The notes: generated by a model from the letters alone, not told the origin. A stretch of DNA of 63,298 nt, filler included, from Octopus bimaculoides (GCF_001194135.2; 8 parts of 6 records of this genome joined end to end with filler, not necessarily neighbours in it), one strand, 5' to 3'. Shown: positions 18,048 through 38,723, counted from the first letter of the whole stretch. A program made the numbers and translations.

Positions 18048-18299
18048 CTCAGCAAATATATTTTCATGCTTCTTTTTAAATATCTCTAACTCTTTCTGAG
18101 AAATCTGTAAGCAATCAGCCAAGGAAGCATTCATTTCTTCAACTTTGGACAAAGTCTTGGTATGATCTATGATTAACTTCTGTTCTCTGCTCTGGAAATA
18201 GGCTTCAGTGCCACTATTCTTCTTTTTCAGCTGCTGGTACTCTTCTCTAACTTCATTTATGATGCTATTTAGTTTCTTAATCTCTTCTTCGTGGTTTTC
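18048..18299 (-). CDS. Coiled-coil protein gene, internal exon (252 nt, phase 0-0)
   Basis: cattag/GAA acceptor, GAG/gtaatt donor, open frame ENHEEEIKKLNSIINEVREEYQQL..KKKHENIFAE. Confidence 0.85.
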
Positions 18300-18521
18300 C
18301 TAATGATAACATCAATATTGGCAATAATGAAGATGATGATATAAACTCATACACACATACAGCTGCTTTTTCAACTTCCACTAAGCCTTTCTAGCATATT
18401 AACATAGCACATCCAAATCTCATTCTTTTCAACCACTGAAAACCGTTTGCATTCATTGCACACAAAAAGAAAACAAACAAATGGATCTTTCCTTATGAGA
18501 TAATGAACCAAATGAACGTAC

Positions 18522-18712
18522 CTTGCTTGAAACAAGATATTTTTCAAGCTCAGCTCTGGCTTCCATTTCAGACAACAGTTGCTGCTTAATGTTTGCAGCC
18601 TGAAGTTCTTTCTCACTCACAATTTTCTCATAGTTACTTATGTTAGCACATTGAGTCTCATTAAGTTTCTTCCATTTGGTTTGTGATAAAGTCAATTCTT
18701 GGAAATGGGAAT
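18522..18712 (-). CDS. Coiled-coil protein gene, internal exon (191 nt, phase 1-0)
   Basis: ttgttacag/AT acceptor, AAG/gtacgt donor, DSHFQELTLSQ..LEKYLVSSK; phases fit both neighbours. Confidence 0.85.
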
Positions 18713-19492
18713 CTGTAACAAAGAAAGCATAATACACTTTTGGTGAGTAAATGTTAAAAGCAACTATTCAAATTTAATTCTATATCATATTGTTCACAGT
18801 GGGAAAACATTACTTTGATAAAATACTTAGTCCAAAATGTACAAATGTCAAAAAAATACAGCTGTCACTTGGAAGTGAGTATGGGCTGGTAGCATGTATC
18901 ATACTCTTGCTAGTTGCTTTAGGTGTCTGTGTAGTCACAAGCAAGCATAGACACACTCATCCATTGACTCAGTGTAACATGGAAGATGTAACAGTTGAAG
19001 ACAGAGAGAGAAGGGGGAGGGAGAGAGGGAGGAAGAGAGAGAGAGGGAATGTGCCAGAACTAGGGTGGTACGTGTTTTCATCTGAGTAGACTGAAACAAT
19101 GTGAAATGAAGCACTTTGCTTGAAGATACAATGCACCACCTAGCTCAGGAATCAAGCCTAAACATTAGGTCAAGTGTGAAGGCCATGTGCCTTCACACAG
19201 ATATAGTAAATCCATATAAATAAGGTCTGGAAAGTAAGAGGTACTATTATAAGGATCAAGATTTGTGCAAATGACTTTGTATATTTTTGGGCTGACCACA
19301 TTGTCACACTAATAGCTTTCTATAATTTCTGAGCAGTCTCCCTCTCTCCTAGTCAGCAAATATTTATGTTGTTCATTGTAAATAGCCAACACTAATATCA
19401 ATGTAAAAAATAGCGAGAGTTGTCTTTCCGTAAAAAGCAGAATGGTACAATGTAACAAAAAACAGAATTTAGAGAAGATGAATTAAGTTTAC

Positions 19493-35183: not shown

Positions 35184-36094
35184 CAAAGATGTATGCAAAG
35201 GCACTTGTACTATTCTATCACTTGGGCAATGCCATCAGTGATGGTTCAACTGCATCATTCTATAGAGGGATGGTAGAGTTGAAGCATGATGATACCTTAG
35301 GGGAGATCCTGGGCCTCAATGATAATCATCTCACCAGCCTATTCTGAAGAACATTTGAGTTGAGGACCCTGGATAATTTTCAGAAGTCCCTGACCTGACA
35401 ATGTTACCAAGAAGCCTTTCCTTTCCAGGATAAGCTCGCAAGGCATGGCTGCCCCATCTCACTGACTTGCCCAAGATGTGTGCAGGATAGAGAAACCATC
35501 CTCAATGTGATTGTGCATTGTTTGGGTGTGTTGGATCTGTGGACTTATTGAACATCTGTTGCCAAGTGTTGGAAGAGTACAGCTGTCTGCTGAGTCAATT
35601 GTAAAAATTAACCCACCTGCCTCTTTAAGTAAAGAAGGTAAGAACTGTTTTCTCATTGTAGTAGCAATTGCAAAAGAGACTGTATGGAAAACTAGAATGA
35701 AAGGATGTGTGACCGGCAATTTCATCTCTGGCCCTACATTGGTGACTTTTTTCACCTTTCATCTGAAAAGGAAGATAGGGCTGGAGAGAAGATGCCTGTC
35801 AGCTGTTGTGTTTGCGTAAAGATGGAAGAGTGTAGTACGAATGTTGAGAATGGACGTACCATTATGAATACTACATAAAGGAGTTACAGAGTCTGAGTGG
35901 TGGAATGGAGCTTGTGATTTCCAAGCAGAATCCATTCCCCAACTCCATTGTACATGTGATTTTGTTTGTCTAATTTCATTCGATTTTATTATATCAGAAA
36001 TTTGTTTTAAATCACACGTCTCATTGTTAAATCATTCGACCCTGTCAATTGTATCATCCCCTCTTTGTTGATCCCCAGTGAGCAATAAAAAAAA
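35184..36094 (+). mobile_element. Tx1/L1-clade LINE 3' fragment, head-to-head with the previous copy
   Basis: ORF 35511-35819 paralogous to 33280-33651; ends gcaataaaaaaaa at 36094. Confidence 0.85.
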
Positions 36095-36530
36095 TTGAAT
36101 GTGATTTTATGAGGATACCTTTCCTGATGAAGGGGACATTGTCTGCATGGTTTGTAAGATTTTTTATAAATTTTTCTACCAGGAGATGAAGTCTGGAAAC
36201 GGCCGTAGAAAGTGGACTTCCATATATACCTTATATACCATTTATATATTTTTAAAAAACACATTGAACTCTATGGATCTTTTAACTGAAACTCTTAACC
36301 ACTCTTAATTTTAGTACAAAAATTTTTTAACAGTTCTCTTATTCTCACACTTCCTTCCATATGTATCTAACAAGGGTTTCATTTACATGTATTTTTACAT
36401 ATATTTATATTTTATAAATATTTTTTAAAACATTCATGTGTCAATGTGTATTAATATATGTATACACATTTGAAGTCAAATTTATAACTATATGAGTATG
36501 ATTGCCTAATTTGAGTTTATATCTTAATTC
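36095..36530 (+). repeat. Hammerhead-bearing AT-rich repeat, right arm
   Basis: Reverse complement of 32578-33037. Confidence 0.75.
36119..36212 (+). ncRNA. Minimal type I hammerhead motif (imperfect stem II)
   Basis: ctttc-CTGATGA-agggg...gtctg-GAAA-C-GGCC-GTA-gaaag; stem I 5 bp. Confidence 0.6.
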
Positions 36531-37210
36531 TATATATACATATACATACATAGTTAGACTCGATACATATATTTACAAGGAGACAAAATACAGATTACAT
36601 AATAAAGAAACAAGGAAACAAAACAGAAAAGAAGAATTATGTCAAGTCTTATCTTGACAGCTATTACAAATAGGAGTGAGGAAGGAGGAGGAGGAGGAGG
36701 AGGAGGAGAAGAAAGAAGAAGAAGAAGAAGAAGAAGAATATATGTATAAAAAAAGAAAGCAACTACATTATTTGCTACTTAATCATATTCAATGTATTCC
36801 TTTCTTTTCCTCTTACAACCTTCACTATATCATATCAATGGACACTATACTAAACACTTAACCCAATCCATCTTCTAGACCCATACCCTACTCAACTCGT
36901 TTCCTATCAATGTTTTACTTCAAAATACTAATGTCTAAGATGACAAAATAACAAATTAGACGTCAACCACATTACTTATATGTTGCTGTTATTGTATGTC
37001 ATCTCATAAGGAATGAAAACAAGCCCTGGTCATACACCTGTTATATTCAGCCTAATTAATAAAATACTTATATTTCTTAGCCCACCCAGAAAATCCTTAC
37101 ATGAAAATATCAACATAGATCAATAACCAATATTGTTCTAACCTCCCTTAAAGTGTAAACTGGTACAATGTTATAAAAATCTGACTTTACAGAAGTTGGA
37201 GTAGCTTTAC

Positions 37211-38723
37211 CATTTGGTTTTTCTATATTAGTCCTGTTAGTTTCTCTTTTGTTAAACTCTTTTTGCAAAGTTTACTTCATATGCTTTATTGAAACAAAAC
37301 AGAAAAGAAGAATTATGTCAAGTCTTATCTTGACAGCTATTACAAATAGGAGTGAGGAGTAGAAAGATTCTTTCGAAGACATTATCACATTATTATGGTT
37401 ACCTTTCAACCTGTTTATCTGTTCCTCCAGTGACTTACACTTGGTAATCTCATCTTCATAGGCATTTTGTATTTTAGCCATTTCTTGCTTGGAAGCCTTC
37501 ATCTCTTCATCTTTTTCACTCAGATGTTGGCTCAGCTTTCTCTTCATTTCATTGTATTCCTGTTTAGCTTTAACTTTCAAATCTGATATTTCTTCATGGA
37601 GATACTTGATTTGTCTGTTTTGGCTTTCCACTTTATTACAAAGATTTGAGACTGGTTTTTGATAGGTTTTAATTGATGCCTCATACTGCCCATAGACTTT
37701 ATCAGAAGCAGCAGCAACTGAATAATATTCAGCTTGTTTTGCCAATTCTTCTTCCTTTTGACTAAGGTCAACCTGGACATCTTTAAAATTTTTGTATTTT
37801 TCTTCTATTGTCATAATTTCAGAAACATGTTCCTGAGAGATTTCTGAGACCGTCTGTTGCATCTCTCCAACAAGAGAAGTAAGTTCTTCAAGTTTAGCAT
37901 CTTTCTCACTGATGGTGCTTGATTTTTCTTCTAACTCCTTTTTCAGTAAATTAGTCTCAATTTCTTTCTCAGAAACGTTCTCTTTCAAGCTGGTAATAAT
38001 TTGTGTCAGTTCATTATTTGAATTTAGATATTTCTCAACAAGTGAAGATTTTTCTGATAAGGATTTTGTTAATTCATAGATTCTCTTGTCCTTTTCACAA
38101 TGTTGTACACTGATTTGTTCCACTTCATTAAATGTCTCCAAATACCTTTCCTCCAACGATAAAGTATGTACTTTGGTTAGTTCTTCAAAATCACCCTTTA
38201 ATTTACTTTTTTGTTCAATGGAATTTTGACTTGCAGTTTCTAGTTTAGGTTTTAAAACAGTTACAAGCTCTTTGGAATCTGTAGTTTCTAGCTCTAATTT
38301 TTCAAAGACATCCTGTTTTTCTCCTGTAAGTTCCTTAAACTGTTTTGCCAGTTCCTTTTTAATGGCTGCATTTTCTTCCAGTAGCAATTTTACTTTTTTA
38401 AATTCTGTATTTTCTGTTGAAATATTAGTCTTAGTAGCATGAACAATTTTCTGAGCAAAATTTTGTATAGAAGATTTTACTGAAGTAACCTTCATTTGGT
38501 GTTGTTGTTCTGATTTGTATATTGCTTCAATCTGTTGCCAATTAGAATCCCTTACACAAATAGATTCAAGATCTTCTTTCAGTATCTCAATAGTGAGCTG
38601 TTTATCCAAAATTTGGTGCTGTGCATTATCATGTTCACTATTCTCTTTTTCCACCTCATTTTGAAATAAATCCTTGTTCAATTTCAGGCTTACAGATTCT
38701 TCTTGCAACTCCAAGCACTGTGA
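37211..38723 (-). CDS. Large exon C (paralog of A and B, 1513 nt, phase 0-1) with premature TAA at 37272-37274
   Basis: attgtag/TCA acceptor and AATG/gtaaag donor homologous to A; open for 483 codons; TAA where A has GAA. Confidence 0.7.

What the first reader, a model, noticed from the sequence alone, without database searches (positions are those of the whole stretch)
18048..38723. Tandemly triplicated, phase-symmetric two-exon module in a coiled-coil gene
Small exons a1 and b1 (both 164 nt, phase 1-0) and large exons A, B and C (same tag/TCA acceptor, phase 0; A and C end in phase 1 at AATG/gt) form a 1-1 module that can be added or skipped without changing frame. The a1-A-18712-18299 chain is an intact ~914-codon frame. 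Modules B and C keep 480-520 open codons and intact acceptors but terminate early. They could be alternative last exons giving short isoforms, skipped or mutually exclusive modules that tune rod length, or recent pseudo-exons or tandem gene copies.
Basis: partly seen in the sequence, partly recalled or inferred. Interest (0 to 1): 0.72.

Follow-up and report, generated by a model that had tools for sequence, protein, structure and literature searches.

The report
Triplicated rod module in octopod NuMA-like gene
Part of an octopus-type gene related to the spindle protein NuMA carries three tandem copies of its main coiled-coil exon module; the triplication is old and shared with the argonaut, and the two copies that look cut short are probably still read in frame through an overlooked splice site.

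Summary
On the minus strand lie three homologous large exons: C (38723→), B (30974→) and A (21629→19493). There are two 164-nt small exons, b1 and a1. All have the stated acceptors and phases, and a1-A-e191-e252 is an open 914-codon frame. A third small exon is not in the piece.

The modules derive from the giant coiled-coil exon of a cephalopod NuMA homologue. Argonauta hians has the same three modules, in the same order and with the same large indels, joined in one 2,091-aa gene model. So the triplication is old. It is not three recent pseudo-exons or three separate genes.

B and C show dN/dS of 0.57–0.65 and no stop across 393 shared codons (P = 0.0008–0.03 if neutral). Their lesions all lie downstream of an internal phase-1 donor, AAG|GTAACC, present in all three copies. 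Argonauta gene models use the homologous site. Splicing there gives an uninterrupted 1,918-codon frame, C-b1-B-a1-A-e191-e252.

Which junctions are used is inferred, since no RNA data were available. The gap lies in an intron full of mobile elements, and only colinearity with Argonauta supports the join. This is a new member of a known kind and of moderate interest.

The parts
37403..38723 (-). Large exon C (module 1), from acceptor ttgtag|TCA to the internal phase-1 donor AAG|GTAACC. 1,321 nt, 440 codons + 1 nt, no stop.
   Evidence: Best match is Argonauta L1 (44.7% over 436 aa).
37211..37402 (-). 3' extension of C, down to the second donor AATG|gtaaag. It is disabled by a net 63-nt in-frame insertion (37291-37358 is an exact copy of 36615-36682), a TAA at 37272-37274 (GAA in A) and a 3-nt deletion.
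31673..31836 (-). Small exon b1. 164 nt, cag|AA…GAA|gtaag, phase 1→0, open.
29450..30974 (-). Large exon B (module 2), from acceptor ttttag|TCA to the internal donor AAG|GTAACC. 1,525 nt, 508 codons + 1 nt, no stop. It keeps an ~89-aa segment otherwise found only in Argonauta L2 and in NuMA itself.
29403..29449 (-). Remnant of the 3' extension of B. A 2-bp deletion at 29429/29428 shifts the frame to a TGA at 29403-29405. Homology to A and C stops at 29401, and there is no downstream donor.
22726..22889 (-). Small exon a1. 164 nt, phase 1→0, open.
19493..21629 (-). Large exon A (module 3). 2,137 nt, phase 0→1, donor AATG|gtaaac. The internal donor AAG|GTAACC is also present, at 19625.
   Evidence: Best match is Argonauta L3 (41.8% over 732 aa).
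20015..20775 (-). Block of about 255 aa made of ~57-aa internal repeats. Present in A, in Argonauta L3 and in NuMA P0002. Collapsed to one unit in B, C, L1 and L2.
18522..18712 (-). Exon e191 (191 nt, phase 1→0). Homologous to the exon that follows the giant exon in both Argonauta genes.
18048..18299 (-). Exon e252 (252 nt, phase 0→0). 65% identical to the corresponding exon of Argonauta NuMA.
32362..32480 (.). Assembly gap inside the C→b1 intron. A SINE-like repeat lies on one side, and (TA)n plus a LINE 3' end on the other.
32577..36531 (.). Two degenerate non-LTR retrotransposon fragments lying head to head, 83% identical over about 1.35 kb. The reverse-transcriptase ORF pieces on the minus strand span 33283-35214. 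This is intron filler.

Best explanation
The piece is the middle of one gene of the NuMA family in an octopod. It corresponds to Argonauta hians GAB1599846.1, a paralogue that lies just downstream of the argonaut's canonical NuMA gene. Its rod is built from three tandem copies of a two-exon unit. Each unit is a ~164-nt exon plus a large exon derived from NuMA's giant coiled-coil exon.

Shown:
- The triplication arose before the window species and Argonauta separated.
- Each copy then lost different internal segments.
- In the window lineage the copies have been partly homogenised by gene conversion.
- All three have stayed open under weak purifying selection.

Inferred:
- B and C are spliced at an internal phase-1 donor (AAG|GTAACC, last exon bases 29450 and 37403). 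This is the ancestral end of the NuMA giant exon.
- Their frameshift, insertion and stop therefore lie in intron.
- The mRNA then reads C-b1-B-a1-A-e191-e252 as one frame of at least 1,918 codons, encoding a very long alpha-helical coiled coil.

Because every unit enters and leaves in phase 1, units could also be skipped without breaking the frame. Whether that happens is unknown.
For: 1. Family. An exhaustive HMMER search with exon A found only three clusters: A. hians GAB1599846.1 (E = 5e-232), A. hians GAB1599847.1 (E = 8e-93) and an O. bimaculoides cluster. GAB1599847.1 has the Pfam NuMA N-terminal hook domain (40 bits, cut-off 27). Its C-terminus matches the LGN-binding peptide of human NuMA (6hc2_B, E = 0.008).

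2. The same architecture occurs in a gap-free HiFi contig of Argonauta. The order there is s1-L1-s2-L2-s3-L3-191-nt exon, every unit is phase 1→0→1, and the whole forms one 2,091-aa model.

3. One-to-one correspondence. tblastn pairs C with L1, B with L2 and A with L3. The large indels agree: the ~89-aa segment occurs only in B and L2, the ~255-aa repeat block only in A and L3, and C and L1 have neither.

4. Constraint. Lineage-specific dN/dS is 0.53 for A, 0.65 for B and 0.57 for C, against 0.87-0.99 in neutral simulations. The probability of no stop in the 393 shared codons under neutrality is 0.005, 0.0008 and 0.028. The coding frame has 0 stops where shuffles give 37-63.

5. Internal donor. 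AAG|GTAACC is identical in A, B and C. It aligns with AAG|GTAATC, the donor used by Argonauta L2 and by the NuMA giant exon. L2 has also lost everything downstream of that site, as B has. An O. bimaculoides RefSeq model uses the homologous site as well. Splicing there yields 5,754 nt, or 1,918 codons, with no stop.

6. Gene conversion. In the central block the window copies are 82-83% identical to each other, and only 41-47% identical to any Argonauta copy. The Argonauta copies are 30-41% identical among themselves. dS is 0.13-0.17 centrally and 0.32-0.64 in the flanks.

7. Coiled coil. The 3.5-residue hydrophobic periodicity has z = 12.3. E + K + L + Q make up 47% of residues, P 0.9% and G 1.2%.
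Against: - No transcript data were available, so every junction is inferred. The Argonauta model comes from an automatic pipeline that mixes ab initio, RNA-seq and homology evidence (PMC12682272).
- A locus-trained donor matrix does not single out the internal donor. It scores 7.0 and ranks 2nd-3rd among 68-95 GT sites per exon, and nearby GTs score similarly.
- a1 versus b1 shows no constraint: 4 synonymous against 25 non-synonymous differences, pN/pS 1.55. b1 has also gained two prolines.
- Gene conversion from A could help keep B and C open without selection on them.
- The extension of C is nearly intact, with one stop in about 44 codons. It may have been coding until recently, in which case the TAA could be a real truncating allele or an assembly error.
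- C is linked to the rest only across an assembly gap.
- The first small exon and both ends of the gene lie outside the piece.
- e252, a1 and b1 are closer to Argonauta's canonical NuMA than to its three-module paralogue. Orthology therefore rests on architecture and indels, not on sequence distance.
Confidence: 0.55

Rival explanations
1. B and/or C, with b1, are decaying pseudo-exons. They are skipped in the mature mRNA, or they trigger nonsense-mediated decay, and only the a1-A module contributes to the protein.
For: - B and C carry disabling lesions at their 3' ends, and B has no downstream donor.
- a1 versus b1 has diverged as if neutral, and b1 has acquired prolines.
- B has the highest lineage dN/dS, 0.65.
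- Gene conversion from A could refresh the frames without selection on B or C.
Against: - There are no stops in 440 and 508 codons upstream of the internal donor. The B-specific ~89-codon segment has no conversion donor in A or C, yet it is open too. At about 0.083 stops per shuffled codon, 89 stop-free codons have a probability of about 5e-4.
- The orthologous Argonauta copies are open and are included in the gene model.
- dN/dS lies below the neutral simulations.
- All lesions fall downstream of a conserved donor.
Confidence: 0.17
2. B and/or C act as alternative last exons. Read-through past the internal donor ends translation at the nearby stop (15 codons on in B, about 43 in C) and yields short isoforms that lack the downstream rod. 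This could coexist with the full-length form.
For: - Stops follow shortly after the internal donor in both copies.
- Predicted O. bimaculoides isoforms X3 and X4 of a related NuMA-type gene end at or just after homologous 3'-block exons, while X1 continues.
Against: - There is no AATAAA or ATTAAA within about 550 nt downstream of the donor or stop in B. The one downstream of C lies in sequence that is coding in A.
- The O. bimaculoides isoforms are computational models in a gap-rich region.
- No RNA data were available.
Confidence: 0.18
3. These are three separate tandem gene copies, each with its own promoter and first exons.
For: Tandem duplication of the whole NuMA-type gene does occur nearby in Argonauta, where two genes lie 15 kb apart.
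Against: - Between the modules there are only SINE-like repeats, LINE fragments and microsatellites. No hook-domain or other upstream NuMA exon is repeated there.
- The unit boundaries are splice sites in matching phase.
- Argonauta joins the three units in one model.
Confidence: 0.03
4. The result is an assembly artefact. Copy C, or the copy number as a whole, comes from mis-scaffolding across the gap or from uncollapsed haplotypes.
For: - A 119-N gap separates C from b1.
- A 68-bp stretch inside exon C is 100% identical to intron sequence 0.6 kb away, which is unusual among copies that are otherwise 74-92% alike.
Against: - The copies differ by 8-26% and by large copy-specific indels, so they are not haplotypes.
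- The order C→b1→B→a1→A equals L1→s2→L2→s3→L3 in a gap-free Argonauta contig.
Confidence: 0.05

Closest known systems
NuMA (NUMA1 / Mud / LIN-5 family), here Argonauta hians GAB1599847.1
   Same: - The large exons A, B and C, the small exons and e191/e252 are homologous to the NuMA rod exons. Exon A against P0002 gives E = 8e-93, and e252 is 65% identical.
- As in vertebrate NuMA (from general knowledge), most of the coiled coil sits in one giant exon. In Argonauta that exon is 3,438 nt.
   Different: - Canonical NuMA has a single module. About 530 aa of its rod are missing from all six paralogue modules (read from the sequences returned).
- The hook domain and the LGN- and microtubule-binding tail that define NuMA cannot be seen in this piece.
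- The Argonauta counterpart of this locus lacks that tail and ends in a hydrophobic segment instead.
Argonauta hians GAB1599846.1 ("COP1-interactive protein 1-like", uncharacterised three-module NuMA paralogue)
   Same: - Three modules in the same order, with the same phases (1→0→1).
- The same copy-specific large indels.
- The same 191-nt exon after the third module.
   Different: - Orthologous copies are only 37-45% identical.
- The Argonauta copies are strongly diverged from one another (30-41%), while the window copies are homogenised (82-83% in the central block).
- Argonauta L1 uses the downstream donor, whereas the downstream extension of C in the window is broken.
- Small-exon lengths differ: 161, 176 and 152 nt in Argonauta against 164 nt here.
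Tandem exon duplication in long rod or repeat proteins (a general phenomenon)
   Same: - Adjacent homologous exon units in the same orientation.
- Symmetric intron phase, so copy number can change without breaking the frame.
   Different: - The unit here is a two-exon module of 1.5-2.3 kb of coding sequence, not a single small exon.
- No evidence yet shows whether the units are constitutive, cassette or mutually exclusive.
O. bimaculoides XP_014769243/5/6 ("myosin-8-like"; NuMA hook domain plus short rod plus hydrophobic tail)
   Same: - NuMA-type rod exons, with the 3' block of the large exon repeated as separate exons that use the same G|GTAA-type phase-1 donors.
- Its terminal exon is shared with the Argonauta three-module gene.
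   Different: - Only the ~60-aa 3' block is multiplied there, about four times, and no full modules are seen.
- That locus is full of assembly gaps.
- It is not the same locus as the window. The best nucleotide identity between them is 77-83% over short exon pieces.

Membership tests
NuMA family (NUMA1/Mud/LIN-5) | N-terminal NuMA hook domain (Pfam PF21670) | not testable with these tools
   The piece starts inside the rod. Upstream exons lie beyond 39796. The domain is present in Argonauta NuMA P0002 (40 bits against a cut-off of 27). The N-terminus of O. bimaculoides P0005 is 63% identical to that region.
NuMA family (NUMA1/Mud/LIN-5) | Long central coiled coil homologous to the NuMA rod, mostly in one giant exon | tested here: met
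   Exon A against P0002 residues 1039-1718 gives E = 7.8e-93. The heptad periodicity has z = 12.3. Exon-by-exon colinearity holds for the small exon, the large exon, e191 and e252.
NuMA family (NUMA1/Mud/LIN-5) | C-terminal LGN-binding and microtubule-binding region | not testable with these tools
   This region lies downstream of 17656, outside the piece. In the Argonauta gene with the same three-module architecture it is absent, and the model ends in a hydrophobic tail. P0002 has it (6hc2_B, E = 0.008).
Tandem duplication of a frame-neutral exon module within one gene | Adjacent homologous units in the same orientation, with nothing but intron or repeat sequence between them | tested here: met
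Tandem duplication of a frame-neutral exon module within one gene | Identical intron phases at the unit borders (1→0→1) | tested here: met
   The same phases hold in Argonauta.
Tandem duplication of a frame-neutral exon module within one gene | Every unit has usable splice sites and an open frame between them | tested here: inconclusive
   All acceptors are intact. With the internal donor the frame is open for 1,918 codons. That donor is not singled out by a donor matrix. The alternative downstream donor is lost in B and lies behind a stop in C.
Tandem duplication of a frame-neutral exon module within one gene | Units joined in transcripts | not testable with these tools
   No RNA data for the source species. 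There is only the Argonauta pipeline model.
Pseudo-exon / dead duplicate | Disabling mutations spread through the copy and dN/dS near 1 | tested here: not met
   There is no stop or frameshift in 440 codons (C) or 508 codons (B) upstream of the internal donor. dN/dS is 0.57-0.65 against 0.87-0.99 in neutral simulations, and P(no stop) is 0.0008-0.028. One exception: a1 versus b1 alone looks neutral.
Alternative last exon | A stop followed by a poly(A) signal within the retained intron | tested here: inconclusive
   Stops are present. There is no AATAAA or ATTAAA within 550 nt after B, and one after C lies in A-homologous sequence. The signal consensus in cephalopods was not verified here.

The most novel reading that the evidence does not exclude
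The three frame-neutral modules are used combinatorially, with one, two or three included, or with termination after C or B. This would set the length of the rod in a NuMA-derived paralogue that has swapped NuMA's cortical and microtubule-binding tail for a hydrophobic tail anchor. The paralogue would then be a membrane-tethered spacer of adjustable length. Each module would add roughly 65-105 nm, taking about 0.15 nm per coiled-coil residue. Gene conversion would keep the modules compatible with one another.
Probability: 0.12. Interest if true: 0.6.

Novelty: new member of a known kind. Interest (0 to 1): 0.4.

Why it matters
The result turns an apparent case of two half-dead exon copies into a probably intact, very long coiled-coil gene.

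It shows that octopods carry, beside canonical NuMA, a NuMA-derived paralogue whose rod was tripled by duplication of a two-exon unit. That arrangement has been kept at least since the Octopus-Argonauta split. The fossil lower bound used in PMC12682272 for that split is about 29 Ma, assuming the window comes from an octopodid.

It is a clean example of three processes acting together: module duplication in matching phase, donor-site shift between paralogous exons, and concerted evolution.

For annotation there is a practical lesson. Gene predictors that extend B and C to the first stop would wrongly split or truncate this gene. The function of the paralogue is unknown and would need experiments.

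Tried and rejected
- Word-indexed protein search, three attempts: exon A, e191+e252, and an alignment of the hook domains. None gave a hit. It even missed proteins known to be in the collection, so it gave no information on other Octopus species, and the source species stays unidentified.
- Pfam on the exon translations gave only sub-threshold coiled-coil noise.
- Search for a third small exon upstream of C, by tblastn and blastn with relaxed thresholds over 38724-39796. Nothing was found.
- Poly(A)-signal scan downstream of B and C. Uninformative.
- Donor-strength matrix built from 45 donors of the three related loci. The internal and downstream donors score alike (7.0 against 6.1-6.6) and sit in the weak tail of the training set, so the matrix cannot decide between them.
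- Haplotype duplication. Rejected because of the 8-26% divergence and the large indels.
- An independent recent triplication in the window lineage, which the 82-83% similarity of the central block might suggest. Rejected because the copy-specific indels match the Argonauta copies one to one. Gene conversion explains the similarity.
- O. bimaculoides locus L003 as the same locus as the window. Rejected, since the best hits are 77-89% identical and are mostly repeats.

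
Full report
**What is there.**
The usable piece is 17656-39796, and the gene runs on the minus strand. Stop-to-stop frames show three long open frames: 19401-21629 (743 codons), 29406-30974 (523) and 37275-38723 (483). They are 66-74% identical as protein and 74-92% identical as DNA in blocks.

- Exon A runs 21629→19493 (2,137 nt), with acceptor tag|TCA and donor AATG|gtaaac.
- B starts at 30974 and C at 38723, with the same acceptor type.
- a1 (22889→22726) and b1 (31836→31673) are both 164 nt, cag|…GAA|gtaag.
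- Two further exons follow, e191 (18712→18522) and e252 (18299→18048).
- a1+A+e191+e252 is 2 nt plus 914 open codons, as claimed.

No third small exon exists in the 1,073 nt left upstream of C. The piece therefore shows two complete modules plus one large exon.

**The gap.**
The Ns at 32362-32480 sit in the intron between C and b1. A SINE-like repeat flanks them on one side; other copies lie at 17702-17898, 23822-24010 and 24451-24732. (TA)n and the 3' end of a non-LTR retrotransposon flank them on the other side. No reading frame crosses the gap, so "in frame" does not apply. Nothing in the sequence proves continuity. The only support is that the order C→b1 equals L1→s2 in a gap-free Argonauta contig.

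**What the lesions are.**
Aligning the 3' ends shows that B has a 2-bp deletion at 29429/29428. This leads to a TGA at 29403-29405. Homology to A and C stops at 29401, so B has no counterpart of the AATG|gt donor.

C has three changes before its retained AATG|gtaaag donor at 37211:
- a net 63-nt in-frame insertion, of which 37291-37358 is a 100% copy of 36615-36682, lying 0.6 kb downstream in its own intron;
- a GAA→TAA change at 37272-37274;
- a 3-nt deletion.

Everything upstream of these lesions is open.

**What the gene is.**
The word-indexed protein search found nothing. An exhaustive HMMER scan of 1.8 billion representatives found only three clusters:
- Argonauta hians GAB1599846.1 (P0001, 2,091 aa, E = 5e-232);
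- A. hians GAB1599847.1 (P0002, 2,233 aa, E = 8e-93);
- an O. bimaculoides cluster (XP_014769243/5/6).

P0002 has the Pfam NuMA N-terminal hook domain above threshold. Its N-terminus matches human NuMA (9hhl), and its C-terminus matches the LGN-binding peptide of human NuMA (6hc2_B, 3ro2_B). It is therefore the argonaut NuMA. P0001 lies 15 kb downstream on the same strand.

Exon mapping shows P0001 as s1-L1-s2-L2-s3-L3, followed by a 191-nt exon. Every small exon is phase 1→0 and every large exon phase 0→1. P0002 has a single module with a 3,438-nt giant exon. The A. hians assembly is HiFi-based, and its models come from a pipeline combining ab initio, RNA-seq and homology evidence (PMC12682272).

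**Age of the triplication.**
tblastn pairs C with L1, B with L2 and A with L3. In the six-way alignment:
- an ~89-aa segment, also present in NuMA itself, is kept only by B and L2;
- the ~255-aa block of ~57-aa repeats, also in NuMA, is kept only by A and L3;
- C and L1 have neither;
- the collapsed-repeat junction is homologous in C, B, L1 and L2.

The three copies and their mosaic of deletions therefore existed before the two species split. Yet in the central block the window copies are 82-83% identical to each other and only 41-47% identical to any Argonauta copy. The Argonauta copies are 30-41% identical among themselves. Synonymous divergence is 0.13-0.17 in that block and 0.32-0.64 in the flanks. 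This pattern is what gene conversion (concerted evolution) in the window lineage would produce.

**Are B and C alive?**
Pairwise dN/dS is 0.51-0.56. Lineage-specific changes were assigned on the three-copy star tree. This gives dN/dS of 0.53 (A), 0.65 (B) and 0.57 (C). Placing the same substitutions at random gives medians of 0.87-0.99. It leaves the 393 shared codons stop-free in only 0.5%, 0.08% and 2.8% of trials. The coding frames have no stops, where the other frames have 30-101 and shuffles 37-63. The B-specific segment cannot be refreshed from A or C, and it is open as well.

Against this, a1 versus b1 shows 4 synonymous and 25 non-synonymous differences, as expected without constraint, and b1 has gained two prolines. 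Gene conversion may also contribute to keeping the frames open.

**The overlooked donor.**
All three window copies contain AAG|GTAACC (last exon base 37403, 29450, 19625) in phase 1, upstream of every lesion. In the cross-species alignment this site is AAG|GTAATC in Argonauta L2 and in the NuMA giant exon, and both gene models splice there. Like B, L2 has lost all homology downstream of the site. L3 has destroyed the site (GAAGAT) and reads on to AATG|gtaaat, as A probably does. L1 reads on too. O. bimaculoides RefSeq models use both kinds of donor in different copies of this block.

Splicing C and B at this donor gives C-b1-B-a1-A-e191-e252 = 5,754 nt = 1,918 codons with no stop. A donor matrix trained on 45 donors of the three related loci gives this site 7.0. 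The downstream donors score 6.6 and 6.1. The internal site ranks 2nd-3rd among all GTs in each exon, which is compatible with use but not decisive. The product is a textbook coiled coil: 3.5-residue periodicity z = 12.3, rich in E, K, L and Q, with about 1% each of P and G.

**Verdict.**
The structural observation is correct. The most likely reading is an old, conserved triplication of a NuMA rod module inside one gene, with B and C still in frame through the ancestral exon end (confidence 0.55). The rivals are:
- B and/or C decaying and skipped (0.17);
- short isoforms ending in B or C (0.18, not exclusive with the main reading), an idea echoed by predicted O. bimaculoides isoforms that end at homologous exons;
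- separate genes (0.03);
- assembly artefact (0.05).

Tandem duplication of exon units in matching phase within rod proteins is a known kind of event. What is new is this particular gene family member and its history. RNA evidence from the source species would settle the open points.

Noticed in passing
L001 53052-53189 (A. hians) and L003 81316-81447 (O. bimaculoides): The last exon of the Argonauta three-module gene and that of O. bimaculoides XP_014769243 are homologous (49% identity). Both end in a hydrophobic stretch (…VFYILLTTLLCSFLVVPIYS and …FNLLFTTMCCSFFVVLL). This suggests a tail-anchored NuMA paralogue that lacks NuMA's LGN- and microtubule-binding tail. Whether the window gene ends the same way cannot be seen.
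   Followed up: partly
window 37291-37358 and 36615-36682: A 68-bp stretch inside exon C is 100% identical to intron sequence 0.6 kb downstream, next to a (CTT)n/(CCT)n microsatellite. All other duplicated sequence here is 74-92% identical. It is either a very recent templated insertion or a local assembly error.
   Followed up: partly
window 32577-33927 and 35204-36531: Two fragments of one non-LTR retrotransposon family lie head to head (83% identity over 1.35 kb). Broken reverse-transcriptase and zf-RVT ORFs lie on the minus strand (33283-35214). They fill most of the C→b1 intron.
   Followed up: partly
window 17702-17898, 23822-24010, 24451-24732, 32010-32336: A ~190-bp SINE-like repeat occurs in both orientations, 73-83% identical between copies, with many copies also in the O. 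bimaculoides locus. One copy abuts the assembly gap.
   Followed up: no
window 22436-22667 and 31352-31582: The introns just downstream of a1 and b1 share a ~230-bp element at the same relative position. The same element occurs at several places in the O. bimaculoides locus (77-83% identity). So a mobile element was either duplicated together with the module or carried along by conversion.
   Followed up: no
window 26356-26522 / 28963-29129 and 27123-27379 / 28732-28982: Nested inverted repeats (75-83% identity) lie in the B→a1 intron, starting about 250 bp below the point where B loses homology to A and C. Copies occur in the O. bimaculoides locus. They are probably transposon copies and may be linked to the loss of B's 3' extension. 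A 70-bp near-palindrome sits at 26522-26591.
   Followed up: no
window 39007-39756: A 750-nt pyrimidine-rich, low-complexity tract on the minus strand gives spurious 131- and 250-codon open frames (rich in L, P, S, F and H). It has no Pfam hit and no similarity to the small exons.
   Followed up: partly
window 25201-26100 and 27691-27745: Long (TG)n and (ATGT)n-type microsatellite arrays produce spurious open frames of 100-157 codons on both strands.
   Followed up: no
L003 70521-77113 (O. bimaculoides): In O. bimaculoides only the ~60-aa 3' block of the large exon is multiplied. There are four copies, one of them unannotated at about 71672-72008. Three are used as separate exons. The locus contains ten assembly gaps, so its true structure may be under-assembled.
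   Followed up: partly
L002 22737-22838 (A. hians NuMA): The argonaut NuMA model splits its giant exon with a 100-nt intron. Its giant exon also contains a long array of LTEQIEILN(E/V)EKQALNKD-type repeats that is absent from all paralogue modules.
   Followed up: no
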